Of a stretch of DNA of 64,000 nucleotides, positions 22,628-61,838 are shown in pieces. The notes beneath the pieces were generated by a model, which saw only the letters and a list, made by a program, of their open reading frames with translations, did not search any database and was not told the origin of the DNA. The DNA is taken from the sequence record OP123707.1. One strand, 5' to 3'. Within the stretch, counting starts at the first letter, position 1, and each line of letters opens with the position of its first letter. A program made the position numbers and the translations under genes.

Positions 22628-22741
22628 TCGTAGCTGAGCGCCTTCTAGGGGTGACCCTAGTCGAATAACTATTCCTAAAACGGGAACTCTCATCAAACTA
22701 ATCCCTTGGTGAGACAATCCGTTGCTAAATTAATACTGCCG

Positions 22742-22760
22742 TTCTCCTAGATAAGGAGAA
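22742..22760 (+). promoter_or_regulatory. Hairpin sequestering the endonuclease RBS
   Basis: TTCTCCT-agata-AGGAGAA, 2 nt before ATG 22763. Confidence 0.7.
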
Positions 22761-22762
22761 AT

Positions 22763-23620: not shown

Positions 23621-23760
23621 TAAGTAGAGTATTCCACAAGTGTGGAAGAAAAGGAATAGGGTCTCCAAGGATGGAGATCGTGATGTGCTCCGATTCTCAC
23701 TGTGAAGTGAGCTGGTATTAAATTACCGCTATAAAGGTAACGCTTTATAGGAAGATATTG

Positions 23761-24069: not shown

Positions 24070-24134
24070 TAGATATGGGTAGGGCTGAGGCTCTACCTGT
24101 GCTTTTTTCTTTTTCAATATTTGAGGACAGAATT

Positions 24135-41300: not shown

Positions 41301-42771
41301 ATTGGCATGGGACGAGTTGTTGTACGGCGGCAACCCAGTGGTGACGTTCGGTCCAAGTACAGAAACGAAAGTGGTCACTTGGTCTGATGTGAACGACATC
41401 GTACAGTTCCCAGCGAACTTCGGTCTACTGAACTTTGCTACTCAAGCGGAACTTCCTAACCAGCTAACTGTGAACGGTACTATCCTGACGCAGAACGGCA
41501 ACCAAGGTGGAGATTACGGTTACGTTAAAGTGTTCTCGAAAGAGACCTTAACCACCGTTGATCTAAGCGCGGGCATGACAACTGATGGTTCATTCAACAG
41601 CAGTTACGGTCCTTTCTTGGAAGGCGGTAACACCGTCGTGTTCGCTGTGAACGGTTACCACCAAGTTGAAGAAGTGGTTTGGAACGAGAAGCCTATGGAA
41701 CTGGCTGAACTACGAGTGACTCCGTTCATCTCTAGTTTCGCTAAGACCGGTAGCACAATGACTGTGACAGGTAACGCATTCCAGGCGAGTGGTGAAGCCT
41801 TCACTCCAGACTCTGCGGTAACGTTTGATGCAATCAACGTCGCTACGGATGAAGTGGTGAAAGGTACGATCAACCCAGATGGTACTTGGACCGTTGATGT
41901 GGGTAGCGCAGTAGAAGGTGAAGTAACATACACGTTCACGGAAGAGAACGATGAATGGACAACCTTCGGTGACTTCGTAATGACTTGGTACGCAAATGCG
42001 ACCTTCCGTCCTGCGGCGTACACGACTGAACGCACCCACCTAGGAAGTACGGCTTACGTAGCGTATGTATTCCAAGACCAGAATGGTAACCCTATAGTAG
42101 GAGAAACATTTGCAGCGGCAGTTGACAACCAAGTTGACGAAGAAGTAGCCAATGCAGTGGCGGTAACCAACGAGTTTGGTATTGCTACGTTTGACGTTCC
42201 TTACGTACAGGGTCGTAACCAAATCGAAGTCTACGGTGAGTTCGGTGGTATCGGTCACTTTGATTCCATCGATTGGGTTAGCGAAAGCATCCATGTGGGT
42301 ACTGAGTTTACTCAAGTGGTTCACCCAGAAGTCATTGGAGTTGGTGATACGTTCCGCATTACTGGTTCGGTGTTGGATACCCAAGGTAACCCAACAACAG
42401 TCAGCGATGTTGGTATCTTTGACCTACAATCTCTAGATTGGGTGGAAGCGCAAGCAACCACTGGTGGTAATTTCGTGGTTGAGTACACTCCTCAGGGTGA
42501 AGGTCCGCAGTACATCGCACTTTACACTGAAGCGTACTTCCAGATGTTCGAGTACACCACTGATGGCGAGTTCGTGAAGATCGACCAAGTGAACGTGTTG
42601 GATGGTTCTAACAAATATATCCTAATCGACGGTGCCGCGGTTCTACCGAAGCCTGAAGAGTTGGTTATTGAGTTGAGTCCAGACAACCCTCAGTATGTAT
42701 TGGTTGAAGCCCCAGTCGTGATCACTACTTCAACAGACCCGGATAGCCCAGATACCATTCTGGTAGAATAA
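35326..42771 (+). CDS. phiKZ gp26-like virion protein (first ~570 aa) fused to a long chain of Ig-like (Big-type) repeats
   Basis: ATG 35326 follows GAGG. Linker GPSTETPEP at about 37041-37070. After it, ~90-100-aa acidic beta-rich units recur with motifs D..G.P, TD..G.A/F, DG.W/F and a terminal V.W. Confidence 0.75.
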   Translation: MFEKTLTSPETQAVIPGAGPQLPNDNEASRIHYIWDIYNPDTVKSGEESRYRVPKEKEVVVDPVAQQWYIVTHVNWEGDLRSTLEPIFVTGGEGDVDPLNSIFGLPAGYQGEAIVGIDYSVRPNRAVIDGQVMAPGAAYGLLYEGNTVGENGKVISVLYGSNGEMISNRIPTELAAHHDLTNKEIMVTQPFSVNRNAEELPDGSRCTLVWFDHTGNMIPKARSLSVQHTSLLRDHQVGKRYIRKVELIAPWFLSSADPKTLHIPVNTVLQNLSFRAVVHYSDGSKSEELPIDGQKVILYGLNEHKPSTPSQRGTLTLVYNLDRDEHIYEAQAGNPNQYRDSYSLLAVEFDGAYSPKLYSYPTWVNGQYLLKHYLTDLDRSFIIDATDHVRINELSPAFRPTTYGVEQTLELNLRLSDVVPTFEPMIMRQSTTFILKTPGTEDGSKFDVRYSYDQRAYNDPTFRAVNQADGRQQIEFGGGFETQEEWLDELYHAVEPAYNTRRERGPMAPTHFEVEASSGKVYSFELSQWDEKIYLDTQEPQARTIFVRWVHETIQGEKLLLATTGISIDVVEGPSTETPEPTSIEFDSSMVTEIGEGEVFEVSGVVYDQNGKPMKDGLTTLLVRGGVFHAVAPRKIEVKIDGSFRFYTWSEKAVGETQTLEFAFETGKAPVYFTTRDIDIVENDFEVVNEFYPYSPTKVSVNKPARAFGYMTDGDGNRLTDYQFYSLVGDDLDSIKVESTDDNGDFLLSRFHGGSESLAIINVKAGGTDDVRTLSWIEGESYGDRITIDQLDWTYVGTEQMALTGRVYDQFGDLVSDVSTTVGFGPQWNPASVTKTGLQGSYVLNHAYMEPGDAYDIVVWTDNDFVFATVTWEEEVVVADRIVMDSTNPDEAPAGTTVRITGKLVDLDGNDFVSDSQTPITVTRLGSGENNLIYAGLDGKFEYEVGPFNDWEVTTFLFELAGKPPVTHTVTWMGEPAKLNTLKFDTGLATETKVGLPITLMGDAIDQHGKLFAPGVPFEFEVEYAGKTGMASSPGDGRWSYSANNDTEGDVLFTFKSDTRVVGTYTIKFAGEIFIRPLPNVDMEYRIPTGESMTVGWYVVDENNDIVVGQRVDIKQTLPIENNLGYGITDKYGKFEYTVPYYPAGFGEIYGYAGVKEAPITLAWRDEEDIGFTISSFSAPQYVYNGVTALVRAIVRNENGEALDTGRLMCYSRDTYTLVDLIPYDANNMPEGNVELNGWNGNLLDGEQAYWVGPLPEGKHDLVFFTESETKLWPMTWRVYDKELSRIELAEDTATKALTPTDAPTVYIRGTGIAGDESVFLPSTPKPVTWEGSDGTSGNTVVNVDGSVGYYITNVAGPGTVVYTIKDGARILATFEIEYINGTLTELPYSQTMRLTGESAIVAWGVRDENDQAVEGLTLLKAINPVENEIYTNGITDEWGIMELVLDSTDAIPGSTKVTVNFDPENPTVALINTTTTLGGDADIVEMTAGTAYVRAEAEPRSQTVSWFEPGTTDPLMANVTDVTFASEPGYGLGEVKLFTGVEGVSGVTQPTANFVIFDKGSFDYVDCGTTSEEGERPPYYDFQGDGSLEADIRGGASWDGTRHLLFATGYDIHEETVEWVGEEKPVAGLAVLPYSNVAQVTQNEGFVAIGAMTEEGEGVPNIPVTMSLGAQGAQTQTVLTDEFGIAEFTLPSNDGQGTDWTGPTDIFVSYAHHTTDWNIAWGASAAMATTQVRWSDHTETVGAGSEGVIAAVMMGVNNTVINAPQLMAFNKTTMNLVPVTPHNNLQNMFYGHIEAQPEGVNAFVFSTPYTHFERTLTWVAEPAKDWDGIDWVIANDSPEVVSTFATNFIDGKLLSWTAETGEQPMRIMGPVTVDYRRSDGSGAGTAYALPDGTVSIPVGSPTELEEIWSFTDNDREVASKTVKFIDGATVDFTGYSHSDAVTGTSAHVSAFVKDAEGNGVPNATIVFALSNFSNVPFAKVKTDQFGIAEAALAWDELLYGGNPVVTFGPSTETKVVTWSDVNDIVQFPANFGLLNFATQAELPNQLTVNGTILTQNGNQGGDYGYVKVFSKETLTTVDLSAGMTTDGSFNSSYGPFLEGGNTVVFAVNGYHQVEEVVWNEKPMELAELRVTPFISSFAKTGSTMTVTGNAFQASGEAFTPDSAVTFDAINVATDEVVKGTINPDGTWTVDVGSAVEGEVTYTFTEENDEWTTFGDFVMTWYANATFRPAAYTTERTHLGSTAYVAYVFQDQNGNPIVGETFAAAVDNQVDEEVANAVAVTNEFGIATFDVPYVQGRNQIEVYGEFGGIGHFDSIDWVSESIHVGTEFTQVVHPEVIGVGDTFRITGSVLDTQGNPTTVSDVGIFDLQSLDWVEAQATTGGNFVVEYTPQGEGPQYIALYTEAYFQMFEYTTDGEFVKIDQVNVLDGSNKYILIDGAAVLPKPEELVIELSPDNPQYVLVEAPVVITTSTDPDSPDTILVE

Positions 42772-42811
42772 CCGGTAAGGATCAAGTAACAAACACTTAG
42801 GTGTTAACAGA

Positions 42812-42837
42812 ATGAAGGGGAGGCAACTCCCCTTCAT
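42812..42837 (+). terminator. Terminator
   Basis: ATGAAGGGGAG-gcaa-CTCCCCTTCAT followed by a T-tract. Confidence 0.85.
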
Positions 42838-42896
42838 CCTTTTTCTTTCAATAAAGTAAACAGCAAATTTAATTAACCTAATTAATGGAGTTAACA

Positions 42897-45800
42897 ATGA
42901 TTGGGATTATTAAGGGTAATATACTGGATGCCGATGGTGTACCCATCAATCCCGGCAAACCAGTAACCATCACAGGTAAACGTAGTGACGGTGGCGATGA
43001 CATCACACTCGTAACCGAGAATGATGGTACGTGGACCTTTGACATCTCCTCCACTGAAATTGGTGAATGTATGATTACGTTCATGTACGGTGGTTTGCAA
43101 GTCGGTCAATACGGCGTCTGGTTCGTGGACGATGTCAATCTGCAAGTCCTTCCTTATTCTAGCAAAACAACCCATCAAGGTCGTGGTGCACTAGTTGCGT
43201 GGGCGGTTACCGATGTTGAAGGTAACGGCATCCCGAATGCTCCACTCACTATTTACGATAACGGCACGGACCCGGCTCCGATTGCAGTTGTCACCACTGA
43301 TGAATTTGGTATCGCTGAATTATCGGTTCCGGCAACCAATGGCCAAGGTGAAGAAACAGTTGGGTTCCGTCGCTTCCACGGTACTATCGGGAAACAAATG
43401 TCCAGCCACGCAGTGGAATGGATTACGACTGACGATCAAATCGCGTATGTCTTTGATGACGTTAAATACACCGCAGAAGTTGAAGCAGGTGGTAGTGCGG
43501 TTATTTCAGCTCGTCTATTAGACCAAAACAATGTGATGGTCGACGCCCCTACGTTTGGTGTGTTTAACAAAAACACTTTAGAAGTTACCACAGGTGGTGC
43601 TTACATGACGGCTGATGGTTTAATCGTCAGCACACCAGCAGATCAGGGTCAGGGCGTAAGTACACTTTACCTTTACTCTGAGAACGCTCGTCATGAGATG
43701 ACCGTGGAATGGCAAGATCAGTTATCTGAAGCAGTTGCGAGCATTGAACTTGTTGCACCAGATGCAGTTGTGTTCCCAACGGGTGATGACGGCACGGTAA
43801 TGCACGGTACTGCGCTCAACGCAGCGGGTGACCCAGTAACGATTCGTAACGAAGTGAAATTCGACACGAAGTCTGATGGAGTGAATGACGGTTTTGGTTT
43901 AGTACTGGCTGATGCCTCCTTTGCTATTTTGATGCAAGCCTTTACAGCCACAACTAAAACTCGTGAGATCGCTCTTAATGGCACCACACTCTTTAATAAA
44001 GAGTATGAGTATCGTAATGGTTTAACCATTGCTAAATGTGAGTACGGCAATGACGAAATCCCAACTGGAGCTGATGGTTTCGTTGCTTTCGCTATCACTG
44101 ACGGTGATGGTGAGATCGTACATGGTGCTGCGGTCACTTACACAAAGAGTAACGGGCAGCGTTATTACACAAACAGTCCTTTGGATGGCAATGGTCTTCT
44201 TGAAATCCCAGTGTCTCAAGATGGCAACGAAGGTCGTACGTACGAAGAAGTGCGCGCAACGATTGGTGACGTAACCGCGGTCTCCGGTGCCTACTGGCGT
44301 CCATCGAACATTTCAGTCGGTACCACACTTCAGGACATCGTGTTCCCAACATCGTCTAAGGATGATGAAGTTATCCGTATCATGGGTACACTGAATGACC
44401 AGAATGGCGTAGGTGTATCTAACGTTAAGTTGGGTATGTTCAACGTTTCTACGTTGGGTTACGAAGAGTTTGGCCTAGATGGTGCTATTCAGCTAGACGG
44501 TAGTTTCGAGTTTGACTACGGTCCATTAGGGGTCGGTGAACACGAATTGATTCTGGCTACTAACGCCGCAGTAGAACGTCGTGACACGGTATGGACGTCA
44601 AGTATCCCTGCGTTCGATACATTGGTGGCGGAAAGCTACGGTACCGACATTAGTGAACCAGGCGCTACTGATATGCTTCCGGTAGCCGCTATTGACGTCG
44701 ATGGTAAGGGTGTTCCAGGCGTTCCGGTGACGCTCTACAAGTCTGATGTGAACAGCACTCAAGGTGAAGAGATCACTACGGTTACTACTGATGAGTTCGG
44801 TGTTGCTGAATTCATTTTGACTCCACCGATTACAGATTCGACAGTAGACGGTACAGAATACTACTTGGCGAAAGTGCGCGATAAAACAGTTCGCACCCAG
44901 ATCTATCGTCATCCAACTCGACCAGCCGCTGGTGGGTTTGTTAATGTGGCGTTCCCTTCAGTTGCCCCAGTGGGCAGCCGTCTCTTAGTATCTGCTGATT
45001 TAGTGGGCACCGATGGCGAACCAGCACTAGTCGGTGGGACATTTACTGTTTGGAGTAAGACTTCACGTCAACATATTCATGCCTGGAACAATACCTACGG
45101 AAACACTGTGACATTGAGTATCGCTCCATTGCCGGAAGGTTCTCACACATTGGTACTTGGTCTTGGGGGCAGCACAGCTTGGCACGAATTTGAAGTTAAC
45201 GTTTCTAGTGCCGTTAGCGAAACACTTCCAGCAAGCATTGTTATTGATCCGTTATCACCAACAATTGGTGGTGTGGGGCAAGACGTACCTATCATTGGTC
45301 GCGCTCTGGATGGAGCAGGTGATCCTTACATCCCTAACTCAGCTATTCAGATTCAAGCGAGAGATGAAGCTAAGTCGTATTACGGTTATGCACACATCGA
45401 AGCGGACGGTACCTTCACCATTCTTTACGAATTGCAAGCGCTGGGCGATACATCATTGTTCATCGAAGAATCGAATGTTGAAACCTCATTGGGTAACTGG
45501 GCATTAACAGCCCGCGATGACCTAACACTATCGGTATCGGAATCGACTACAGAGCGTCCAGCTCACGGTGATCCAGCAACGATCATTGGTCGTGTTGTAG
45601 ATTCAACAGGTGATCCGGTAGAAGGTGCTTGGTTGGAATACACAGATTCTTACGATGTCCTGGGCTCTGGTGCCACTGATGTGAATGGTTACTTGGTTTC
45701 TGAAGTTCCTTTCCGTCACAAGTACGCAAGCTTCGACTTCCAAGCGAAGATGGGCGACTTAACATCAGGTGTAGACGTTAGTCTTGCTTGGGCTCCAGAA

Positions 45801-47807
45801 GACGAATTCTCGGCCAGTCAGTTTGTTGGTGTTCTGATTCCTGAGAATGCAGACGTAGCGAAACCGTTCTCGGTTCGTGGTCAGGTATTGGATTCAGAAG
45901 GCAACCCGTACGTTGGTTCAACTGTGTACCTGACTGATAAGTTGAGTGGTCGTGACATTGACATCTTTGTAGGTACCGATGGTAACTTCTCCGCAGACAT
46001 CATTCTATTCGAAGAAGGCGTCCACGAGTTGATTCTAGGTACTAACGGTGCCATCCATGAAGGTCAAATCGAGTGTACACTTACCATCCCTGATGTAGAT
46101 GCAGCGACGTTCTTACCTTACACCACAACTGAAGCCGCGACAGGTTCTAACACTTACATCGCAGTACAAGTAACCAACCTAGGTGTTGAAGTTGCGGATG
46201 CTCCGGTAACCGTGTACGTTCAAGGTGAAGAAGACTCCATGGCTATCGGTTACACCGATGCACGTGGTTACATCAGCTTCGACTTGGATACATCTGCGAT
46301 GACTGGTACGGTTACGTTTGATGTTAACGTGGGTACTACTGTGCTTGGCTCTACTGTGGTTACTTACACAGACAACAAACTGGCAAGCTCGTTTGACTCA
46401 TTGATGTCTATGTCACCAACTGACTTCGAATCCCCAGCGGTAATTGAAGCGGTGGTGGTTGACCAAGATGGCTTGGAAATCATTCAACCTGAGGTGAGCG
46501 TTTACGATCTAACCAACTTACAACCAGTAGTGGTGACCAACACGTCTCACCGTGGCGACCGTACCATGTTCACTGTTCCAGCCGGTACAGAAGAACAGGT
46601 GATCGACTTGATGGTTTACACCGATAACGCGCGCAGTGTGGTTACTGTCGACTGGAACTTAGTGGAAGAGAGACTACCTAAGGGAGTAACTCTAAGCGAA
46701 ATCCCAGCGAACACTGACCTAGACGTTCCAGTAATGGTAACGTGCGATCTGTTGGATGATGGTGAGATTCAGTACGTACCTAACCGTCCAATGGTCATCA
46801 AGTTGGTGGACGAAGTGGGTACTGAGCACTTCAGTGATGTGGGACCTAACGGCGAGTTCTACTTCAGCCTGTTAGAAAACAGTTACGCGAACCGTACTTA
46901 CGAAATGTTCTACCAAGACATTAGCTTGTCTACGTTCAGCATTGAGTGGGGTGTTCGTCAGCCTTCGACTTACCTTGACGTAATGGTCAATGAAGATCAA
47001 CCTACCATCGGTATCATAGGTTCACCAATCACGATAACAGGTAAAACTCTGGATCAATACGGTGACCCAATGGGTGATCAACCTGTTCGTTGTTATGTGG
47101 ATGGTGCAGTTCATGGTGATGATGTTACTTCGGATGCAGAAGGTAACTGGAGCATGGAATTCAGTGAACCTACCGAAGGGGATATTACGTACACCTTCCG
47201 TTGGCTTGCAGGACGAGTGGATCCTACCCACACCGTAACTTGGACGGTGAACCCACCAGTCTATAGTGGAGTGCGTGTAGTCTCAGGAGCAGTGGGTGCT
47301 ACTGTAAACGAGACTGTACAAATTGAGATCGAAACTATCGACCAATACGACAACGTAATTGGTGCTCAAGAATTCACTTGGGATGATGGTTCTGGTCCAG
47401 TCACTGTGACTTCGGATGCAAATGGTCTCTACACCTTAGATGTCACCGCAACAGAGGAAGGCCCAGTCACTTACACCTTCATTGGTGTGGGCGACACGGC
47501 CACTCACCTGATTACGTGGGAAGCAGTAGGTCCTATACTCACTACCATTGAAGTAGTGTCTGGTGCAGCGGTTGGGACCGTAGGTGAAAACGTTGACGTT
47601 AAGATCGTAACGAAAGATCAGTTCGGTGATCCAATTGCCAACCAATCGATCGTTTGGGATGACGGTGGTATTCCTAACCCAGCGACTAACTCAAACGAAC
47701 TGGGTGAGATCACGTACCAGTTCACACGTGGTGCGCCAGAAGTGGTTACCTACACCTTCAGTGGCGCTGGTGATGTTTCAGCACAACATGTGATCACTTG
47801 GTCATAA
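42897..47807 (+). CDS. Ig-like repeat fibre/adhesin protein 1
   Basis: Start ATG 42897 (GGAG 6 nt upstream) preferred over 42885. Repeats as above; the last two domains are close paralogues (VVSGA.G.V.E.V.I.I.T.DQ...W). Confidence 0.75.
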   Translation: MIGIIKGNILDADGVPINPGKPVTITGKRSDGGDDITLVTENDGTWTFDISSTEIGECMITFMYGGLQVGQYGVWFVDDVNLQVLPYSSKTTHQGRGALVAWAVTDVEGNGIPNAPLTIYDNGTDPAPIAVVTTDEFGIAELSVPATNGQGEETVGFRRFHGTIGKQMSSHAVEWITTDDQIAYVFDDVKYTAEVEAGGSAVISARLLDQNNVMVDAPTFGVFNKNTLEVTTGGAYMTADGLIVSTPADQGQGVSTLYLYSENARHEMTVEWQDQLSEAVASIELVAPDAVVFPTGDDGTVMHGTALNAAGDPVTIRNEVKFDTKSDGVNDGFGLVLADASFAILMQAFTATTKTREIALNGTTLFNKEYEYRNGLTIAKCEYGNDEIPTGADGFVAFAITDGDGEIVHGAAVTYTKSNGQRYYTNSPLDGNGLLEIPVSQDGNEGRTYEEVRATIGDVTAVSGAYWRPSNISVGTTLQDIVFPTSSKDDEVIRIMGTLNDQNGVGVSNVKLGMFNVSTLGYEEFGLDGAIQLDGSFEFDYGPLGVGEHELILATNAAVERRDTVWTSSIPAFDTLVAESYGTDISEPGATDMLPVAAIDVDGKGVPGVPVTLYKSDVNSTQGEEITTVTTDEFGVAEFILTPPITDSTVDGTEYYLAKVRDKTVRTQIYRHPTRPAAGGFVNVAFPSVAPVGSRLLVSADLVGTDGEPALVGGTFTVWSKTSRQHIHAWNNTYGNTVTLSIAPLPEGSHTLVLGLGGSTAWHEFEVNVSSAVSETLPASIVIDPLSPTIGGVGQDVPIIGRALDGAGDPYIPNSAIQIQARDEAKSYYGYAHIEADGTFTILYELQALGDTSLFIEESNVETSLGNWALTARDDLTLSVSESTTERPAHGDPATIIGRVVDSTGDPVEGAWLEYTDSYDVLGSGATDVNGYLVSEVPFRHKYASFDFQAKMGDLTSGVDVSLAWAPEDEFSASQFVGVLIPENADVAKPFSVRGQVLDSEGNPYVGSTVYLTDKLSGRDIDIFVGTDGNFSADIILFEEGVHELILGTNGAIHEGQIECTLTIPDVDAATFLPYTTTEAATGSNTYIAVQVTNLGVEVADAPVTVYVQGEEDSMAIGYTDARGYISFDLDTSAMTGTVTFDVNVGTTVLGSTVVTYTDNKLASSFDSLMSMSPTDFESPAVIEAVVVDQDGLEIIQPEVSVYDLTNLQPVVVTNTSHRGDRTMFTVPAGTEEQVIDLMVYTDNARSVVTVDWNLVEERLPKGVTLSEIPANTDLDVPVMVTCDLLDDGEIQYVPNRPMVIKLVDEVGTEHFSDVGPNGEFYFSLLENSYANRTYEMFYQDISLSTFSIEWGVRQPSTYLDVMVNEDQPTIGIIGSPITITGKTLDQYGDPMGDQPVRCYVDGAVHGDDVTSDAEGNWSMEFSEPTEGDITYTFRWLAGRVDPTHTVTWTVNPPVYSGVRVVSGAVGATVNETVQIEIETIDQYDNVIGAQEFTWDDGSGPVTVTSDANGLYTLDVTATEEGPVTYTFIGVGDTATHLITWEAVGPILTTIEVVSGAAVGTVGENVDVKIVTKDQFGDPIANQSIVWDDGGIPNPATNSNELGEITYQFTRGAPEVVTYTFSGAGDVSAQHVITWS

Positions 47808-47845
47808 GACATTCATAATTTGATCCAATTCTAATTGGACTACTT

Positions 47846-47879
47846 ATCATAACTCGGAGGATTAGCTCCGAGTTATGAT
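47846..47879 (+). terminator. Terminator
   Basis: 14-bp stem ATCATAACTCGGAG / CTCCGAGTTATGAT. Confidence 0.8.
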
Positions 47880-47957
47880 TATTCTGAAATCGTATAGAAG
47901 TAACTAAACATGAGTTCTATTTTAGGACAAGACGTAAATTAGACTATTGGAGTAGAT

Positions 47958-52931: not shown

Positions 52932-52942
52932 TAAAAAGAAAG

Positions 52943-52968
52943 TTACTCGGTGGGCATCCACCGAGTAA
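52943..52968 (+). terminator. Terminator
   Basis: TTACTCGGTGG-gcat-CCACCGAGTAA. Confidence 0.8.
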
Positions 52969-53082
52969 ACTTTACATAAAAAATAACTTTAATACATTTT
53001 ATTTCGCTCAAACTTAGTCTTGACATTAAGACTTGTATTAGGGGTAAATTGTTGTATTTTAATCATGGTTAAGTAGGAAAAT

Positions 53083-55362
53083 ATGACTACTACAATTGAA
53101 AGTAATTTAAATCACCCTATCGAACTCACTATTAAACGTGACGATGATCAACCGGATAGTACAGTTGTCACAAATCCTGATGGTAGTTGGGAAATGGACA
53201 TTGGTCCCGTGGCGACATCCAGAAAAGTAAAATTCAGCTTTTATCATGGTGAGCAAAAAGCGGGCGAGCATTCGATTAGCTTCATCAATGCTCCCGTAAG
53301 CGCGGAAATATTGTCTGGGGCTTACCCAGTCATGGCCTTTGACCAAGAAGCCACCATCACTTACCAATTAAAAGATGCAGACGGTAACAACTACGTCGGT
53401 AGTGAAGGTGAATTTATTAAGATCGAATCTGTTGAGTCGGGTTACGTCCATCTTGATATTCCAATTCCAACAAATGGCATCATCGAGATACCGTGGAGTA
53501 AAACAAGTGTGGGCAGCGAAACTCACGTTTTAAAGAACGGTCAAGATGGGACTTTAAACGAATACACTAACGAGTACGTCGTGGTGGGTGACTTGGGTTT
53601 CATGTATCATGACGAAGATCCTAAGTTAGGTGAACCCTGGACACTTTTTGGTTATGCGATGGACCGCAATGATGTTCCAATCGCTGGACTACCTATTCAT
53701 GTGTACTCTTTAACCGAAGAATACCCGTATGACGAAACACTGACCACCGATGAGAGAGGATTAATTTCGATACTCCTGGATCCTCCGGAATCGTCAGAAG
53801 AGTTTGATGTTGAGTTAGAAATGTCAGCGGCTGGACAAACTGATGATGTTTATTTAACGTGGGCGGATTATAATGACGGCGCACGTGGCTTCGTTGAACT
53901 GGACCCAACTCCTTCTGAAGTTGCTGAAGCTGATGGCATCACTTTAACAGGCGTGGTTAAAGATGAAGGTGGTAACCCAATTCCTAATGGGAGGGTGCAT
54001 TTTTATCGACTTGACCCAGGAAATAGTATTTATCACAATGATACTTACACCACGGACGGGGATGGTCGATTTTCATTCGACACTTGGATCGATATGGGTA
54101 AGCAAACGTTTTTTATGGCAACGGATGAACATTTTGTTGCCAGAGACATTGCTGGGTTTGTTTCCCCTGAAATGGACATGCTTCAGTTGGGTGGGATTAC
54201 TTTACCTTACCTTAAAGACTCTAAGGTCTCTGTTATTTACCGAGATAAATTTGGTAACCTGGAAGCTGGGAAAACCATTACTTTTAGATACGACAGCGAC
54301 ACAGGACCCATCGCAGGAACGGTAGTTACTGACGAAAATGGGTTGGCAGAATATCCGCTGGTGTGGGACGAAGTCCAAGACCACACGAAAATCTATGCCA
54401 TCAGTGATGCGGATACTGGTGTTTCGATTATTGAAAAGGCTTCGATTAATGAAGTGGTTCCTGAGAACTTAAAAATAATCAATGCACCAGCTCGTTTACA
54501 CCCTTATCAGAAAGCCTTCGTTTCAGGGTTTCTTATGGGGTCGGATGGGAAGCCATATAAAGTCCCCACTCAAATTAAAAATCATTGGGATGATTTTAAT
54601 TGGACTGGGAGCACGGAAAGTGACGCGGACGGTTACTTTGAAATTAGCTTTAATCCGATGGAGTCCACGTCAGAAGACGGGAGTGAATACTTCTTAGGTA
54701 TTAATCAGGGCATGTCACGCATTAAAATCGCGTGGGATGACGGTAAAGCAGGCAGTTACCAAAGATTCAGATTCGACGCTCCTGATTTTCCAAATGGTAT
54801 TGGACCATCACAAACGATCACACTGAATGGTAAAATGCGAGATGATATGTGGAACGTCCCACCGTTCTATGAAAGTGGGGCGTTGAAACTGATCGCTAAA
54901 GTTTACGTGGATGGCGATGAGTTATCAAGTCACAATGGTACTGTGAGGTCGGATGGAACCTTCATCATGGATATCACCACCCCGGCAACTATGGGGATGT
55001 TCGAGGTCTGGCTGACTACCGAAGACGGTAACCATGCCGACCGCATACCTTTATGGGTAGGTGGGCCAATGACGAAATCTTTGACCTTTACTAGACCGAC
55101 TCCAGAGACCCTTCCACCTAATACCACTTACATTGATGTGGCGGGATATTTCAGAGATGAAAATAATCAACCTATTGTTAACCAATTTGTGACGATCTAT
55201 GTGGAAGACCCACGATTCCCATACCCATCAGTAAGGGGGTCTGGTATCACGGATGAAGATGGTTTCTTTAGTACACAAATCTTTAATGGGGTTCCGGGTG
55301 ACGTTAAAATTACAATCACTGCCGAACGTTATGAGGCATCACACCTGATTACCGTCGTATAA
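53083..55362 (+). CDS. Ig-like repeat fibre/adhesin protein 3 (759 aa)
   Basis: AGGA RBS. KRDDDQPD...PDGSW N-terminal module and repeated units. Confidence 0.7.
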   Translation: MTTTIESNLNHPIELTIKRDDDQPDSTVVTNPDGSWEMDIGPVATSRKVKFSFYHGEQKAGEHSISFINAPVSAEILSGAYPVMAFDQEATITYQLKDADGNNYVGSEGEFIKIESVESGYVHLDIPIPTNGIIEIPWSKTSVGSETHVLKNGQDGTLNEYTNEYVVVGDLGFMYHDEDPKLGEPWTLFGYAMDRNDVPIAGLPIHVYSLTEEYPYDETLTTDERGLISILLDPPESSEEFDVELEMSAAGQTDDVYLTWADYNDGARGFVELDPTPSEVAEADGITLTGVVKDEGGNPIPNGRVHFYRLDPGNSIYHNDTYTTDGDGRFSFDTWIDMGKQTFFMATDEHFVARDIAGFVSPEMDMLQLGGITLPYLKDSKVSVIYRDKFGNLEAGKTITFRYDSDTGPIAGTVVTDENGLAEYPLVWDEVQDHTKIYAISDADTGVSIIEKASINEVVPENLKIINAPARLHPYQKAFVSGFLMGSDGKPYKVPTQIKNHWDDFNWTGSTESDADGYFEISFNPMESTSEDGSEYFLGINQGMSRIKIAWDDGKAGSYQRFRFDAPDFPNGIGPSQTITLNGKMRDDMWNVPPFYESGALKLIAKVYVDGDELSSHNGTVRSDGTFIMDITTPATMGMFEVWLTTEDGNHADRIPLWVGGPMTKSLTFTRPTPETLPPNTTYIDVAGYFRDENNQPIVNQFVTIYVEDPRFPYPSVRGSGITDEDGFFSTQIFNGVPGDVKITITAERYEASHLITVV

Positions 55363-55378
55363 CACAAAAAACTCAATT

Positions 55379-55401
55379 TGATGAGGGAACCCCCCTCATC
55401 A
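55379..55401 (+). terminator. Terminator
   Basis: TGATGAGGG / CCCTCATCA followed by TTTTT. Confidence 0.7.
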
Positions 55402-55503
55402 TTTTTCAATAACATGAGTATAGTCTCAGGTAATCGATGGGACTGCTGTTGCTTAGAGGGTACACAATGAAGTAGTAGTAATATAACACAAAAGGAAACA
55501 GAC

Positions 55504-58065
55504 ATGGCAGGATTAGTAAAAGGGGCCTTATTAGAAGGCAGTGTTAAATACATCCCTGACGAGCCTTTAACGTTGGTGTTGAAACGAGATGACGGTGAAC
55601 CTGATGTCAACGTGGTCACTGATGACCAAGGTGCTTGGAAAGTGTTGGTCGGATCGTTAAACCCAGGCGTGGTAAACTTTACGTTTTACCTAGATGGTGT
55701 GTCGTTGGGCTCCAATGCAATTAACTTTGTTACTTGTACTGGGATTCAATACTTACCATTCTCGGATGACCGTTTGCCACAAGGTCACGACGCTCACGTT
55801 TATGTTGTGGTGTTGGATGGTGCGGGTGAACGTCTTGCTGGCGCTGGTGTTGAGTTTAAGAACGAAGACACTGGTGAGTCGCTGGGTACGGGTGTAACCG
55901 ATCACTTGGGGATTGCTGATGTAGTCATTCCAGGTTTGGAAGCACCGGGTTCACTCAATGTGAAGACCAGTAGCGGGGCATTCTCTGCGTCAGGCACAAT
56001 CACATGGCATGACGGAACTGAAGCCACTCCAATGGACGTGAAGGAATTCGCGTACACCACGGAAGTGAACTCTGCGTTAGCGGGTACGATTGTAGGTCGT
56101 GTGGTGGATCAAAATGATCAACCGGTAGAAAACGCAACATTCGAACTTTATGACTTGGATGACTTAGCGGCAAATACCATCGACCTTTACACTCATCCAG
56201 GGGATTGGGTGCAACACACCGTACCGGTTGAAACCGAAGGCACTCACGAGTACATGGCTTACGTTGGCGGTGTTAAACGTCGCGTTACTATGGACTGGGG
56301 TGCTGGTTATGAAAACGTGGTTCCTGTAACAGCTGAGTTGTTATCAGACATCGACTGTATCTTCCCTTACGACGCTGCACCGGTTCTTAAGTATGCGCTT
56401 AAAGATGGTGACGGTAATAGTATCGGTAGTGCTGGCTTCGAGTTTTGTCGTATCGGTGAAACGTGGGATGGTTGGTCGCGTAACACCATGAGTGGCCCAG
56501 ACGGTATCGTTACCGCACCGTTGAGCTGGCGTGTGATCACAAGCCGTACGTTTAACCTCAGAAGTAATGTGGGGAACACTACGTTGTGGTCTTCTCAGAT
56601 CTTCTTTGATGCGGTGAAGGGTCCAGTGGAAGCGTGGAAGACTCAAAACCCTAAAGTCAATGAAGCGGGTAAACTTGGGTTTGTTATCCGAGACATGAAC
56701 GACCGTCCAATTGACGGTAAGATGTATGTCAAGCTTTTGGAAACAACCCCAGGGAACATCAACTCTGTTGAAGCTAAGAGTAATGAGTTTGGCGTGGTGG
56801 AATTCACAGTTCCTTATGTCGATGGGTTCGATAATCGTACATTCAAGGCAATCATCCCGGGTGCAGCTGAAGCCGATGCTTCACTTACTTGGGTAAATGA
56901 TGCGAGCTTAGTTCCTACCACGATCAACGTAGATCCACTGGGTGCGGAGTTCGACCAAACAGTGGGTGTGACGATTACTGGTACGTTGTTGGATCAAAAC
57001 GGTGACCCGATTGCGGGAGCGATCACGGTTTACGATTCGGTGCGAAAAGGTAGCGTTGTAGAAAACACTAACCCTGACGGAACGTTCAGTTTCGTTTACA
57101 ATGGGGAACGTGGACAACACCACTTATTCATCCAGTCTGGTAATGCAGTTGTTGAGCACCGATTCCTTGGTAAGGGTGTGCGTACTTTGGAATTCATTCC
57201 AGGCACAACCGAAGTCATTCCTTACAACTCATTCGCGTACTTCGCAACACGAGTTCGTGATGAGTATGGTAATGACATTCCTAGCTCCAACATCCAGTAC
57301 TTCTGGGATGCGGAGTTAACGGAAGCCGCTGGTTCGGTGGGCACGTTCAGTAAACGCGTTTCTAAACTCAACGTATCTTGGTCTAACTCGAATGGACGTT
57401 CTGAGATCTATGCGGTGTTTGAAGATCTTGTAGCTTCTCATTCGTTCACTCGTACTGCTGCGCTGGAAGACTTGAACTACAAAGTTTTGGTCTCTAAGAA
57501 CTCGTCTTACTTACCTCCTCGTAACATGGGTCATATCGGCGGGATCATTTCGAATAATGCTGGTGTTCCTATTTCAGATCCATTCACCATCAGAATCTAC
57601 GATCCAGTCGCGGATACTTTGGATGTATACGACAATGTCCTGGATGCGAATGGTCGCTTTAAGGTTCCTATTCTTCCTAAGAAACACGACAGCAACCGTA
57701 AGTTGTATGTTTCGTTTGGTGGGATCTTATGGGAAATGAGTATGGAATACGACCACACCAACTGGATGGAACCTTACGGGGAAGCGGTCTTAGATCCTAT
57801 TCCGGACATCACAGCCAACGTTGCGTTTGACATCACCGGTACGATGAAGAACCAAGATGGTAGTGCGTGGACAGGATCCGGCGGGAACCTATTGATGCGA
57901 GTTGAAATTTATCAAGGTGGTTCTTACTTAGGTAATAAGTCTGGGTACGTCGGGGAAGATGGTCGATTCACTATCAGTCCAACAATTACTGCCGCTGGTA
58001 ACTACCAGCTATGGTTAATGACTTCCGACAGTGATTTCTTTGAAATTATTGACGTGACAGTTTAA
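55504..58065 (+). CDS. Ig-like repeat fibre/adhesin protein 4 (853 aa)
   Basis: AAGGA RBS. KRDDGEPD...DQGAW N-terminal module. Confidence 0.7.
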   Translation: MAGLVKGALLEGSVKYIPDEPLTLVLKRDDGEPDVNVVTDDQGAWKVLVGSLNPGVVNFTFYLDGVSLGSNAINFVTCTGIQYLPFSDDRLPQGHDAHVYVVVLDGAGERLAGAGVEFKNEDTGESLGTGVTDHLGIADVVIPGLEAPGSLNVKTSSGAFSASGTITWHDGTEATPMDVKEFAYTTEVNSALAGTIVGRVVDQNDQPVENATFELYDLDDLAANTIDLYTHPGDWVQHTVPVETEGTHEYMAYVGGVKRRVTMDWGAGYENVVPVTAELLSDIDCIFPYDAAPVLKYALKDGDGNSIGSAGFEFCRIGETWDGWSRNTMSGPDGIVTAPLSWRVITSRTFNLRSNVGNTTLWSSQIFFDAVKGPVEAWKTQNPKVNEAGKLGFVIRDMNDRPIDGKMYVKLLETTPGNINSVEAKSNEFGVVEFTVPYVDGFDNRTFKAIIPGAAEADASLTWVNDASLVPTTINVDPLGAEFDQTVGVTITGTLLDQNGDPIAGAITVYDSVRKGSVVENTNPDGTFSFVYNGERGQHHLFIQSGNAVVEHRFLGKGVRTLEFIPGTTEVIPYNSFAYFATRVRDEYGNDIPSSNIQYFWDAELTEAAGSVGTFSKRVSKLNVSWSNSNGRSEIYAVFEDLVASHSFTRTAALEDLNYKVLVSKNSSYLPPRNMGHIGGIISNNAGVPISDPFTIRIYDPVADTLDVYDNVLDANGRFKVPILPKKHDSNRKLYVSFGGILWEMSMEYDHTNWMEPYGEAVLDPIPDITANVAFDITGTMKNQDGSAWTGSGGNLLMRVEIYQGGSYLGNKSGYVGEDGRFTISPTITAAGNYQLWLMTSDSDFFEIIDVTV

Positions 58066-58084
58066 ACCATGATTTAACTGAAGT

Positions 58085-58119
58085 ATAAATAATCAGGGAC
58101 TTAGTCCCTGATTATTTAT
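58085..58119 (+). terminator. Terminator
   Basis: 16-bp stem ATAAATAATCAGGGAC / GTCCCTGATTATTTAT. Confidence 0.8.
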
Positions 58120-58226
58120 TTTCACTCATTTATTAAAATTAATTGTAAAGGGGACGTTCATGAATTCGTAGAAGTCTAGTTGTAACGAACAATGGACACA
58201 CCCTTAGGGTAAAGAAGGAATTTATT

Positions 58227-61200
58227 ATGGCAACTATTGTCATTAACAGTATTTTAGACGCTGACGGCAATCCAGTAACTCTGGCTGGGTCCGGGATCAT
58301 CACCGGGGTACGAAGTGATGGTGAACCTGATATTACAGTAACGCCCAATCCTGATGGTACGTGGTCTTTTGACTTCACGGCTACTCAACCGGGTAACTGT
58401 GTTATTTCTTTTATGTATGGTGACGTTAAGATCACCGAATACGTTATGAAGTTTGTCGATGATGTTACGGTCATCATTCTTCCTAGAACGACCGCTGAGG
58501 TACTTCAAGGTACTAATGGGTTAATTGCATGTCAAATCACTGACGACGAAGGTACGGTCATTCCTAACGTCCCTGTGCAGTTCTTTGAACCAGTGCAAGG
58601 TAGTGAACCTCTAGAAACACTCACTACCAACTCACTCGGGGAAGTTGAGTGGACCGTCTCCTCCATCAATGGGGTTGGAGAAGAAAGTTTAGGTGCTCGT
58701 AATTTTGAAATTGTGGCGGCGCAACAAACGGTCGTGCAGTCAATCACGTGGATTGTGACAATACCCGAATTCGCTAAATTGAATGTGCTTTGGCACAGTA
58801 GCACCAGTGTTAACCCTGGTCAATTAACGTCTTTAGCTTCTGGAGCTTACACCAGTGGTTGGGATGGTGTCGGGGGTGTTCCTATTGAACTCTGGGACGA
58901 CAACAACAATGTTAAGGTTTCAGAAGGGACAACCGATGTAGGTGGTGAGTTTTATTACGAGCGTTTTGAAGGGCAGTCTATTAATGACCCAAATCTAGCG
59001 CCTGATAAATACTCAGTGAAGGTAGGGGATGAATACAACACCCATTGGGTTTATCGTAACATCGAATACCCTATTGCTGATACGTGGGTGGACGTAGTAG
59101 CTCCTGATGTAATACCAGCGGGCAAGACCGCTTACTTGACAGCCAAGGCACTAGAGCGCAATGGGAACCCATCTGTTGAAGATTCAATGATGGCATGGAT
59201 TGCGGGAGAGGCTACCACCGACGGTTGGTCGACTGCCTTTTATAAAGGGGAAGCGGGACTCAGACTTCCAGTACTTCCAGTGGGAACCCATAAGTTGGTT
59301 ATCCATGAGTACACTTACGGCGGGGCATTCCTACCTATCGAAGTTACGGTGTCTGATCAAGTAACACCAAGTGTTGCATCCGGTATTGTGATCGACGAAA
59401 ACCACAGCACACGTTTTGCTGCGGCATCTCATAGCGTTCCTATTATTGGACACTTATTGGACGAGAACGGAGACGTCTTAAAACCGAACTGGATGTTGAA
59501 CCTTAAAGCTAAAAACTTAGCTACCGGCAGCTCTTACGCGTTCAAAGTCAAACCTGATGGTACATTTGAAGTTAACGTCAGAGGAACGAACGAAGGTGCT
59601 AACAACATTGAGTTCTATGACGCAGACACAAACGTGGTCTTGGGTGAAGTTTACGCTTTTGAGGTGAAGTCGAATATGGTGGCGGAACTTTCAGCTTGCG
59701 CGACTATCCGTCCTGTTTCCGGTGAACCGGCAACACTTATTGCTCGTGCAGTAGACTCAGGTGGCAATCCAGTTAAAGGGGCTTATGTCCAGATTAAAAA
59801 TGTGGGCAACAAGTATGACGTGTACGATGAAGGGATTACTGATGAGAATGGGTACATTGAAGTTAAGTTGTACGATTACAAACTTTATCCTTCGATGACG
59901 TTCCAAACTCGATTTAAATCCACTTATGGTGCGGTTCAAATCCCAGTTGGGTGGGCGCAGGAAGGTGAATTGACAGCTTCACAATTCACTAATCTTTCAA
60001 TTCCAGAAGGTGTTCCGCCTGGAACAGAGTTTACGTTCACTGGTAAAATAGCCGATCAAAATGGAGACCCATATCCAGGAAGTCAGGTTATTGTTCTGGA
60101 TAAGAAAGAAGGTGTTGAGGTAAGTGCAACGGTTCAAGCCGATGGTACTTTCTCGGCGACACTTACCCCCACAGTAGAAGGTCCACATCCACTGGTGATT
60201 GCGGGCAATGGTGTAATTGCTCGTCATGAACTTAATGTCAGTAATCCTAAATTAGATGTACTTGATAATTCACCTACTTGGGTTGGTGCCGGGATAGATG
60301 GTAACATATACGCGGCAGTGGTTGAGAGTGATGGAACCCCAGTTCCAAATACCACCATTGACTTTTACGCCTCAACATATGACTCTTCTCCAACGCAAAC
60401 TATCGTAACGGATGAGACGGGTATTGCACACTTTGTTATTCCAGCGGAAGATCCTGTTTGGGGCGGAATCAACTTAGGGGAATATACGTATAAATTAGGG
60501 TGGGGTTCGGAAACGAAATTGTGGAGAATCACATGGCATGAGGTGGAAGGTCCGTTGTATCAAATCTGGGAAGCACCGTACAGCACTAAACGTGGTTCGT
60601 ATGGCGCAACCAGTGAGATAATTGCAGCGAGTGCGCGCTCAGCCAGTGGTTTCCCAATGCCAGGTGAAACCTTAACGTTGCACGAAAGGGATACTGATGC
60701 TTTATTGGGAACCGCAGTAACTGACCAATATGGTTATGCGGAATTCACCATCAGTTCACCGACTAGTGATCCAGAAGATCAAACTGTGAGTACTTATGAA
60801 TACTACGTGTTCAAGTCAGGAGATGAAAGTATAAGTCTCGAGGTTGATTTACGCCGTGACAAATGGCTCACTACAGTTCCTGGTGGAATAGAGAATATTC
60901 AGGTCCCTACAGAGATCCCAGTAGGTAAGAAGGTTATGATTGGTGCGGATTTACTTGATGTCTATGGTAAACCATTGCCGAATCCTGTTGGGTTCTCCAC
61001 TTGGTCTAAGGAACAAGATGAGTCATTATTTGGTTTAGGAAGCGGTACCAGTGGTCTTTACAATCATGCTTTGACTTTGGTTAACACCAACAACTTACCG
61101 GTTGGGACTCACAGTCTTATTCTTTATGGTGGGTTGAGCAATGGTCCACTCGCAGAGATTGAACTAAACATCTCTGATACTGTGGTAGCTTCGGAAATGG

Positions 61201-61793
61201 GTAATATCGTATTTGACGGTAACAACCCGACTGTCGCCCGGAAAAATCAAAAGTTCACGATCTGGGGTAGGGCTTTAGATGTGAATGGCGACCCGATAGA
61301 AATCAACCATTATTCACGTGTTAGTGGAAAACATACCGTAGAAGGCAGAGGTAGTTACGGAAGAGTTAATCCAGATGGCACCTTTACAATGCAATTAGAT
61401 ACTTATACTCTTGGAACAGCCGTGTACGAGTTCCATGATTACGTCCATGAAGACGGGTGGGTTTTCCCACAAACTTTTAGTATCGAGATCCGTGATGATA
61501 TTTTGGCGGACATGACGGACGGACCTGCTCTTAACCCAGCTTATGGGGAAACGGTCACGCTTACCGCTCGCGTTCTGGATGATTTAGGAAACCCAGTCGC
61601 AGGCGTGATGGTACCTTTCATTGATTGGGCAACAGGCAAACAATGGGGACATGGCATATCTGATGCCGACGGTTATGCAAGTTTTGATTTAATTCATCGT
61701 GAACAATACACGTCGATTGAGTTTTACACCAAACTTAGTAGCACCACCGCTTCAGTAAACAGAACCACTGTTACTTGGGCTGATCCTGTCTAA
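58227..61793 (+). CDS. Ig-like repeat fibre/adhesin protein 5 (1188 aa)
   Basis: AAGGA RBS. N-terminus closely paralogous to protein 1 (ILDADG.P...ITG.RSDG..DIT....DGTW.FD...I.FMYG). Confidence 0.75.
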   Translation: MATIVINSILDADGNPVTLAGSGIITGVRSDGEPDITVTPNPDGTWSFDFTATQPGNCVISFMYGDVKITEYVMKFVDDVTVIILPRTTAEVLQGTNGLIACQITDDEGTVIPNVPVQFFEPVQGSEPLETLTTNSLGEVEWTVSSINGVGEESLGARNFEIVAAQQTVVQSITWIVTIPEFAKLNVLWHSSTSVNPGQLTSLASGAYTSGWDGVGGVPIELWDDNNNVKVSEGTTDVGGEFYYERFEGQSINDPNLAPDKYSVKVGDEYNTHWVYRNIEYPIADTWVDVVAPDVIPAGKTAYLTAKALERNGNPSVEDSMMAWIAGEATTDGWSTAFYKGEAGLRLPVLPVGTHKLVIHEYTYGGAFLPIEVTVSDQVTPSVASGIVIDENHSTRFAAASHSVPIIGHLLDENGDVLKPNWMLNLKAKNLATGSSYAFKVKPDGTFEVNVRGTNEGANNIEFYDADTNVVLGEVYAFEVKSNMVAELSACATIRPVSGEPATLIARAVDSGGNPVKGAYVQIKNVGNKYDVYDEGITDENGYIEVKLYDYKLYPSMTFQTRFKSTYGAVQIPVGWAQEGELTASQFTNLSIPEGVPPGTEFTFTGKIADQNGDPYPGSQVIVLDKKEGVEVSATVQADGTFSATLTPTVEGPHPLVIAGNGVIARHELNVSNPKLDVLDNSPTWVGAGIDGNIYAAVVESDGTPVPNTTIDFYASTYDSSPTQTIVTDETGIAHFVIPAEDPVWGGINLGEYTYKLGWGSETKLWRITWHEVEGPLYQIWEAPYSTKRGSYGATSEIIAASARSASGFPMPGETLTLHERDTDALLGTAVTDQYGYAEFTISSPTSDPEDQTVSTYEYYVFKSGDESISLEVDLRRDKWLTTVPGGIENIQVPTEIPVGKKVMIGADLLDVYGKPLPNPVGFSTWSKEQDESLFGLGSGTSGLYNHALTLVNTNNLPVGTHSLILYGGLSNGPLAEIELNISDTVVASEMGNIVFDGNNPTVARKNQKFTIWGRALDVNGDPIEINHYSRVSGKHTVEGRGSYGRVNPDGTFTMQLDTYTLGTAVYEFHDYVHEDGWVFPQTFSIEIRDDILADMTDGPALNPAYGETVTLTARVLDDLGNPVAGVMVPFIDWATGKQWGHGISDADGYASFDLIHREQYTSIEFYTKLSSTTASVNRTTVTWADPV

Positions 61794-61804: not shown

Positions 61805-61838
61805 ATAACCGAGTGGAGTGAAAGCTCCACTCGGTTAT
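61805..61838 (+). terminator. Terminator
   Basis: 14-bp stem ATAACCGAGTGGAG / CTCCACTCGGTTAT followed by TT. Confidence 0.8.

What the first reader, a model, noticed from the sequence alone, without database searches (positions are those of the whole stretch)
42580..61793. Possible branched fibre system assembled by beta-strand complementation
Seen in sequence: (a) Five paralogous genes start at the same register (MIGIIKG, MVDTIKG, MTTTIES, MAGLVKG, MATIVIN) with a shared (K/V)R(S/D)D(G/D)..D...DG.W domain. (b) Internal copies of this domain have about 15-18 extra leading residues (RIVMDSTNPDEAPAG, SIVIDPLSPTIGGVG, VMVNEDQPTIGIIG) that all five N-termini lack. (c) The anchored 35326 protein is the only one that does not end on a complete domain; it ends in three tandem segments resembling that missing piece (VNVLDGSNKYILIDG, IELSPDNPQYVLVEA, TSTDPDSPDTILVE). 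Inference: the tail donates strands that complete the truncated first domains, so up to three of five interchangeable adhesin chains dock on each anchor. This would be a pilus-like donor-strand mechanism, and I know of no description of it for phage fibres.
Basis: partly seen in the sequence, partly recalled or inferred. Interest (0 to 1): 0.85.

Follow-up and report, generated by a model that had tools for sequence, protein, structure and literature searches.

The report
Split Ig-domain junctions in phage fibres
A giant Vibrio phage has a baseplate-anchored arm ending in a floppy tail of strand-like units, next to five adhesin-like chains whose first domain lacks its opening strands. This suggests, but does not prove, that the chains plug onto the arm the way pilus subunits join.

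Summary
The window is Vibrio phage phiKT1028, a phiKZ-like jumbo phage. The "anchor" (35326-42771) is a homologue of phiKZ gp26, a baseplate-periphery protein, extended by about 1,900 aa of invasin-type Ig domains. Five downstream genes encode Ig-array proteins with a shared 70-78 aa N-module.

Points (a) and (b) of the finding hold. The N-modules form a tight family, found only at residue 1 of fibre proteins of this phage group. HMM register and an AlphaFold2 model agree that they start at strand B and lack strands A/A'.

Point (c) holds in part. Only the anchor carries a non-domain tail, about 60 aa and predicted disordered. Units 2 and 3 are a real tandem duplication; unit 1 is only weakly alike. 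The claimed likeness to the missing leader is not above chance.

Relatives add support. Similar orphan tails also end the first fibre gene in pTD1, VP4B and a metagenomic phage. In that phage the next protein lacks only strand A. Donor and acceptor counts match in several genomes.

Trans strand completion is the best-supported reading (about 0.45) but is untested.

The parts
32754..35333 (+). gp27-like scaffold protein of the outer baseplate periphery (DUF7193)
   Evidence: Pfam DUF7193 at 1067 bits. PDB sequence hits to PHIKZ027 (9xqd_G) and 11pb_C. Its role in phiKZ is taken from PMC13250141.
35326..42771 (+). Anchor protein A (2481 aa). Residues 1-575 are gp26-like, followed by about 19 Ig-like domains and a C-terminal tail.
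   Evidence: PHIKZ026 (9xqd_a) at E=8e-58 over residues 38-556. Big_1 and PHROG 27497 hits. Domain map. A short gp26 in Klebsiella phage Miami ends at the point equivalent to A residue ~575.
42571..42648 (+). Tail unit m1 with a Pro-rich linker. This is the only tail piece shared by all extended gp26 homologues.
   Evidence: S, N, L and I are invariant in 8 homologues. Aphrodite-type proteins stop right after it, 21 residues past the inferred end of the last domain (24 past its conserved Trp). pLDDT below 50.
42649..42711 (+). Tail unit u2
   Evidence: Tandem duplicate of u3. Aligns weakly to leader positions 7-23 of the domain HMM. pLDDT below 50.
42712..42768 (+). Tail unit u3, a duplicate specific to phiKT1028
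   Evidence: pTD1 and VP4B have a shorter, different end at this position.
42812..42837 (+). Terminator-like hairpin between A and B. Similar hairpins follow C, D and F; B is followed by a palindrome seen only by eye.
42897..47807 (+). Fibre chain B (1636 aa). Long-type N-module at 42897-43130, then 15 Ig domains.
47958..52931 (+). Fibre chain C (1657 aa). Short-type N-module at 47958-48167.
53083..55362 (+). Fibre chain D (759 aa). Short-type N-module at 53083-53292.
55504..58065 (+). Fibre chain E (853 aa). Long-type N-module at 55504-55734.
58227..61793 (+). Fibre chain F (1188 aa). Long-type N-module at 58227-58460.

Best explanation
SHOWN. Protein A is a gp26-type protein of the outer baseplate periphery. 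In this vibriophage lineage it has acquired a long arm of invasin-type Ig domains that ends in an unfolded tail. Genes B-F are monomer-like strings of Ig domains, that is, adhesin-like chains. They share an N-terminal Ig module that lacks strands A/A'.

INFERRED. Chains are joined non-covalently at split Ig domains. A leader-like unit at the C-terminus of the upstream chain inserts as the missing A/A' strands between the open B and G edges of an N-module. This would hang one or more interchangeable adhesin chains on each arm. Unit m1 would serve the long-type modules (B, E, F), and the duplicated units u2 and u3 the short-type modules (C, D).

The likely origin is fission and cassette exchange of giant Ig-array genes that were inserted at the 3' end of gp26.
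For: 1. Anchor identity and position.
2. Truncation: the N-module starts at strand B in all family members, and full-length matches among 1.84 billion representative proteins begin only at residue 1. The AlphaFold2 model has six strands against eight in domain 2, with the lowest confidence on the two edge strands.
3. Boundary fit: Aphrodite-type A ends 21 residues past the inferred end of its last domain (24 past the conserved Trp). The next gene starts 10 nt later at strand B.
4. The A tail has pLDDT below 50 and no secondary structure, while the two preceding domains are confident.
5. The pattern recurs. In a metagenomic relative (L015), P1 ends 21 aa past its last domain with an A-strand-like piece and a double stop. 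P2 starts 16 nt later at HMM position 7 (25 bits), so it lacks only strand A.
6. Tails are tandemly amplified twice independently: u2/u3 here, and two ~30-aa units on P1 of pTD1 and VP4B. The latter are related to the pTD1 A-tail unit (p=0.012).
7. Counts, sorted after the fact: u-type units against short-type modules are 2:2 (phiKT1028), 3:3 (pTD1, VP4B) and 0:0 (Aphrodite type). Total donors against acceptors are 4:4 (pTD1, VP4B) and 2:2 (L015).
Against: - No complex prediction or binding data exist.
- Tail units are not more similar to canonical leaders than to other Ig segments. The HMM places them on the leader at only about 1 bit.
- Unit m1 is no better conserved than the neighbouring domains.
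- The N-module is predicted to fold by itself at pLDDT 75-88, so it may be stable without a partner.
- Donors are fewer than acceptors in phiKT1028 (3:5) and in the Aphrodite type (1:2).
- Some tails (pTD1 A and P1; L015 P1) run into a B-like strand and so overlap the acceptor's own strand. This looks like a recombination scar.
- No fused tail-plus-N-module protein was found.
- The long/short sorting of modules was made after seeing the data, and only three independent states exist.
Confidence: 0.45

Rival explanations
1. The shared N-module docks somewhere else on the baseplate periphery, for example on the gp26-like or gp27-like scaffold. phiKZ fibre paralogues dock through a shared N-terminal domain in this way. 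On this reading the C-terminal tails are tolerated scars of gene fission or cassette recombination inside Ig arrays and have no docking role.
For: - A shared N-terminus among fibre paralogues that docks on a baseplate platform is the phiKZ precedent.
- Tail units show no significant likeness to leaders, and m1 is not an island of conservation.
- Several junctions carry overlapping duplicated pieces.
- Donor and acceptor counts are unequal in two lineages.
- The N-module folds confidently by itself in the model.
Against: - All remnants are limited to the leader (with or without strand B) part of a domain, never longer.
- They were tandemly amplified twice, which a neutral scar does not predict.
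- The truncated head and the leader-length tail fit together within about 3 residues.
- A split placed after the leader, rather than between domains, is what keeps two chains physically linked.
Confidence: 0.33
2. The A tail is a cross-linking peptide in the manner of the gp26 C-terminus. It would insert into a neighbouring arm or another baseplate protein, tying the Ig arms into a net. B-F would attach independently.
For: - In phiKZ, the gp26 C-termini insert into the gp157 ring, into the gp130/gp139 interface and into another gp26.
- The end of the short gp26 in Klebsiella phage Miami loosely resembles m1.
- The tail is disordered when alone.
Against: - The ancestral gp26 C-terminus is retained at about residue 575 of A, before the Ig arm. 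The distal tail is therefore a new element, about 1,900 aa away from the platform.
- This reading does not explain tails on P1 of relatives, or the strand-A-less P2 in L015.
Confidence: 0.1
3. B-F are not baseplate fibres. They would be Hoc-like decorations of the capsid or sheath, or non-virion adhesins, and their position next to A would be incidental.
For: - Ig-like decoration proteins are common in phages (general knowledge, and PMC10385173 listed).
- No virion proteome for this phage group was found.
Against: - The genes always sit directly after the gp27/gp26 platform genes. They fill an insertion that is absent from Klebsiella phage Miami, where the same helicase gene follows directly.
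- The first one is spaced 10 nt from A in three lineages.
Confidence: 0.07

Closest known systems
Type V pili (FimA/Mfa1 of Bacteroidota): protease-mediated strand exchange
   Same: The C-terminal donor strands of one subunit fill the place of a missing N-terminal strand in the beta-sandwich of the next. The link is non-covalent and needs no chaperone (PMC13655056).
   Different: In the pilus the acceptor's strand is removed by a protease and the subunits form a homopolymer. Here the strand is absent from the gene, the fold is Big_1-type Ig, the partners are different proteins, and one tail may carry several donors. No homology was found.
Chaperone-usher pilus donor-strand complementation
   Same: An incomplete Ig fold is completed in trans by a strand from the neighbouring subunit.
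   Different: The polarity is opposite: pilins lack the C-terminal G strand and the donor is an N-terminal extension. They also need a periplasmic chaperone and an usher (general knowledge; contrast stated).
phiKZ outer baseplate periphery: gp26/gp27 platform with gp131/133/134/135 fibre paralogues
   Same: A and U are homologues of gp26 and gp27. In both systems, paralogous fibre proteins share an N-terminal docking domain.
   Different: phiKZ gp26 is 552 aa with no Ig arm. Its fibres dock through a different N-domain and a six-helix bundle under gp130. No Ig arrays or tails have been described there.
Goslar DUF7941 'fibre cloud'
   Same: [quoted passage not shown]
   Different: The domain family is different (DUF7941 was not hit here). 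No split Ig domain is involved.
Branched tailspike/fibre complexes of CBA120- and G7C-type phages
   Same: Several receptor-binding proteins hang on one anchor protein (general knowledge).
   Different: Those use T4 gp10-like adaptor domains and trimeric spikes. No such domains were found here.
SpyTag/SpyCatcher-type split Ig-like domains (engineered)
   Same: A peptide strand reconstitutes a truncated Ig-like domain (general knowledge).
   Different: That system is engineered and covalent, through an isopeptide bond. The candidate Lys in strand B is not conserved in D or F, so a covalent link is unlikely.

Membership tests
phiKZ gp26 family (outer baseplate periphery cross-linker) | Sequence homology over the whole ~550-aa gp26 body | tested here: met
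   9xqd_a PHIKZ026 at E=8e-58, query residues 38-556 against chain residues 21-538. There are 290 phage records with homologues, most about 570 aa.
phiKZ gp26 family (outer baseplate periphery cross-linker) | Synteny with the gp27 homologue and the sheath and tube genes | tested here: met
   U is a DUF7193/PHIKZ027 homologue immediately upstream, with sheath and tube genes nearby.
Big_1 / invasin-type bacterial Ig-like domain | Pfam Big_1 above the gathering score, and an invasin-like fold | tested here: met
   Big_1 at 40-96 bits against a cut-off of 34.9 in A-F. The top Foldseek hit is invasin 1cwv; InvE and InvD also match.
Chaperone-usher donor-strand complementation | Acceptor lacks the C-terminal G strand, and the donor is an N-terminal extension | tested here: not met
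   The missing strands are the N-terminal A/A', and the candidate donor is a C-terminal tail.
Chaperone-usher donor-strand complementation | Dedicated chaperone and usher genes | not tested
   No dedicated search was made. Pfam and PHROG scans of the fibre genes and ten other window ORFs returned no such families.
Type V pilus strand exchange | C-terminal donor strand occupies the place of the acceptor's first strand | not testable with these tools
   This needs a complex model or a solved structure. Only the two halves were shown separately.
Type V pilus strand exchange | Lipoprotein pilin with a transthyretin-like two-domain fold and a protease cleavage site | tested here: not met
   The proteins start directly at strand B with no signal or lipobox, and the fold is Big_1-type.
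Branched RBP systems with T4 gp10-like adaptors | gp10-like attachment domains on the anchor | tested here: not met
   Pfam and PHROG scans of A-F returned no such family.
phiKZ gp131-type fibre paralogues | Homology of the shared N-terminal domain to the gp131/133-135 N-domain | tested here: inconclusive
   tblastn with gp133 hit 4 Vibrio phage records, which were not identified further. The N-module itself matches only Ig families.

The most novel reading that the evidence does not exclude
These vibriophages may use a natural tag-and-catcher system built from split Ig domains. Leader-like peptides at chain ends (two donor classes, amplified in tandem) would complete N-terminally truncated Ig modules (two acceptor classes). 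Separately encoded, exchangeable adhesin chains would then self-assemble into long, branched fibres on a gp26-type baseplate arm. This would be donor-strand assembly used by a virus.
Probability: 0.4. Interest if true: 0.8.

Novelty: new variant of a known kind. Interest (0 to 1): 0.65.

Why it matters
If the junctions are real, they would be the first case of pilus-style strand completion holding phage host-recognition fibres together. It would explain how jumbo phages mount many adhesin chains on one platform, and how whole chains can be swapped by moving a gene with a standard "plug".

It would also make sense of the very large "putative invasin" genes of Gorgonvirinae. And it would describe a small natural peptide/domain pair of a kind that protein engineers have so far had to build themselves.

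Even without the mechanism, one result stands: a gp26 baseplate protein has been extended into an arm of about 19 Ig domains, followed by two to five N-module fibre genes. I found no description of this in the papers searched.

Tried and rejected
- **Leader likeness.** Smith-Waterman comparison of tail units with 196 canonical leaders and with other 20-aa classes showed no enrichment. Comparison with the leader of the one internal N-module-like domain of A was not significant. An HMM search of the tails gave about 0-1 bit.
- **Fused proteins.** I looked for a natural protein with tail and N-module in one chain (a Rosetta stone) among 1.84 billion representatives. None was found, and the internal hits are generic Big_1 adhesins.
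- **Ancestral C-terminus.** I considered that the tail is the old gp26 C-terminus. This is rejected, because that end lies at about residue 575 of A.
- **Read-through or frameshift fusion of A and B.** This is unlikely. A terminator-like hairpin and 125 nt lie between them here. The next frame is +1 in Aphrodite types, and L015 has a double stop.
- **Covalent isopeptide link.** The candidate Lys is not conserved.
- **Failed alignments.** Aligning C-terminal fragments with the pTD1-type full-length proteins misaligned on internal repeats, so those rows were dropped from the structure job.
- **P0068.** This distant N-terminal hit lies on a eukaryote-like or giant-virus-like contig and was set aside.
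- **Literature.** Searches found no description of these genes, and none of strand completion in phage fibres.
Full report
**Source and context**

The window is identical to Vibrio phage phiKT1028 (OP123707.1, bases 124001-188000). This is a 239-kb phiKZ-like nucleus-forming phage of the genus Tidunavirus, subfamily Gorgonvirinae. All genes of the finding are annotated "hypothetical protein". The phage's own paper does not discuss them and only notes a broad host range.

Upstream lie the tail tube and sheath genes, a PhiKZ_VTX-family gene, and U (32754-35333). U is a DUF7193 protein homologous to PHIKZ027.

**The anchor**

The first ~570 residues of protein A (35326-42771, 2481 aa) match PHIKZ026 of PDB entry 9xqd at E=8e-58. 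In the phiKZ virion atlas, gp27 is the scaffold and gp26 the cross-linker of the outer baseplate periphery, the platform that carries the fibres. There are five gp26 copies per star lobe, and gp26 C-termini insert into partner proteins (PMC13250141).

Most of the 290 phage records with a gp26 homologue have a protein of about 570 aa. In Klebsiella phage Miami the short gene is followed by a terminator and a DarB-like helicase gene, the same gene type that follows F here. The short protein ends at the point equivalent to A residue ~575. The Ig arm of A and the genes B-F are therefore an insertion at the 3' end of gp26.

Only nine protein clusters carry such an extension, and all are Gorgonvirinae-like. 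There are two types:
- Tiduna type, 2481-2486 aa.
- Aphrodite type, 1576-1587 aa.

**The fibre chains**

B-F are arrays of 7-16 invasin-type Ig domains (Big_1 and relatives). Foldseek's best hit is invasin 1cwv.

Their first 70-78 residues form a distinct family. They score 97-130 bits against their own HMM, while internal domains score 20 bits or less. tblastn finds the module only in 15 Vibrio and Photobacterium jumbo-phage records. A profile search of 1.84 billion representative proteins finds full-length matches only at residue 1 of such proteins. The remaining hits are generic multi-repeat adhesins.

**The truncation is real**

A domain HMM iterated over the locus proteins puts residue 1 of B, E and F at position 18 of 100, and of C and D at 25-27. 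Internal domains carry a 17-20 residue leader before that point.

The AlphaFold2 model of B 1-178 (pLDDT 82.5) has strands B-G only in the N-module. Domain 2 has the same six plus A (81-84) and A' (91-93). Within the N-module, confidence is lowest on its first strand and at the end of its last strand.

**The tail**

In this window only A continues beyond a complete domain, by 58 residues. AlphaFold2 models the two preceding Ig domains with confidence. It gives the last 62 residues pLDDT below 50 and no secondary structure. The alignment behind that model was shallow.

The tail has three parts:
- Unit m1 with a Pro-rich linker.
- Unit u2.
- Unit u3, a significant tandem copy of u2 (0 of 2000 shuffles). 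m1 is only marginally like u2.

m1 is also no better conserved than its neighbours, although its S, N, L and I residues are invariant.

**What relatives add**

Aphrodite-type A proteins stop right after m1. That is 24 residues after the conserved Trp of the last G strand, which is the length of a leader. The next gene starts 10 nt later at strand B. The two boundaries fit within about three residues.

Tails are not confined to A:
- The B orthologues of pTD1 and VP4B carry 63 extra residues made of two ~30-aa tandem units (72 against 24.9 +/- 5.1). These units are related to the unit in the pTD1 A tail (p=0.012).
- In a 244-kb metagenomic relative (L015), P1 ends 21 residues past its last domain with an A-strand-like piece and two stop codons. 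P2 begins 16 nt later at HMM position 7 (25 bits). It is an ordinary Ig domain that lacks only strand A.

Sorting N-modules by the position of the K-R-[SD]-D motif gives two groups: long (position 27-28) and short (16-20). This sorting was made after seeing the data. On that basis:

| Lineage | u-type units : short modules | All donors : all acceptors |
|---|---|---|
| phiKT1028 | 2:2 | 3:5 |
| pTD1, VP4B | 3:3 | 4:4 |
| Aphrodite type | 0:0 | 1:2 |
| L015 | not applicable | 2:2 |

**Interpretation**

The best reading is that chains are joined at split Ig domains, with C-terminal leader-like units completing N-terminally truncated modules. The polarity matches type V pili, not chaperone-usher pili. 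Goslar's DUF7941 proteins offer a chimallivirus precedent for head-to-tail chaining through a disordered segment.

The case is circumstantial. No complex was modelled, the units are not recognisably leaders by sequence, some junctions carry overlapping B-like pieces that look like recombination scars, and only three independent count states exist. I put the mechanism at about 0.45.

The main rival, at about 0.33, is that the N-modules dock elsewhere on the platform and the tails are tolerated scars.

**Other checks**

- Each of the gaps after A, C, D and F has a terminator-like hairpin, and every fibre gene has its own Shine-Dalgarno. Covalent fusion by read-through is therefore unlikely.
- Searches of the held literature found no description of these genes, and none of strand completion in phage fibres.

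Noticed in passing
window 40876-41106 (A residues ~1851-1927): An internal domain of A carries the N-module hallmark (an R-R-S-D-G motif, then D-G-T and a later Trp). It is conserved in pTD1 and VP4B but absent from Aphrodite-type A. A second, weaker N-module-like domain lies near residue 1000-1080. The N-module may derive from such an arm domain.
   Followed up: partly
L002 (pTD1) gene at 20177-25357 (minus strand), and L006 (VP4B) gene at 10735-15894: The orthologues of B carry a 63-aa C-terminal tail made of two tandem ~30-aa leader-plus-B-like units. phiKT1028 B lacks this tail and ends exactly on a domain.
   Followed up: yes
L015 21060-21230 (metagenome scaffold, sample ERZ23499629): An Ig domain is split between two genes. 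P1 ends with an A-strand-like piece and a double stop. After 16 nt, P2 starts just after strand A and has no N-module.
   Followed up: yes
L014 (Klebsiella phage Miami) 4537-4716: The short gp26 homologue ends in a beta-strand-like stretch followed by P-S-N. This loosely resembles tail unit m1 (V-x-I-D-x-x-S-N). It may be chance, or a hint that m1 imitates the gp26 docking end.
   Followed up: no
L008 18247-18426, L009 18405-18584, and the C-terminus of KT1019 P1: The last domain of the 3,500-aa first fibre protein of Aphrodite-type phages looks like an N-module (an R-R-V-S-D or V-R-T-D motif, D-G-E-W, and a Y-x-L-M-Y-G strand).
   Followed up: no
window 42885-42896: The mechanical ORF for B starts 12 nt upstream of the annotated ATG. 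Those bases contain the GGAG Shine-Dalgarno for 42897, so the shorter start, which is in register with C-F, is preferred.
   Followed up: yes
window 22763-23620: A 285-aa ORF matches a homing endonuclease family (phrog_314) among small genes of unknown function.
   Followed up: no
window 5660-11622 and 11623-12477: Two adjacent genes match RNA polymerase beta-subunit families (535 and 1450 aa). They are followed by a 284-aa protein with a baseplate-hub or peptidase-like C-terminal part (phrog_196, phrog_21656).
   Followed up: no
window 61805-61838: A strong 14-bp hairpin, scored as a terminator on the minus strand, lies just after F and before the helicase gene. Terminator-like hairpins also follow A, C and D; B is followed by a palindrome seen only by eye, and none was confirmed after E.
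   Followed up: partly
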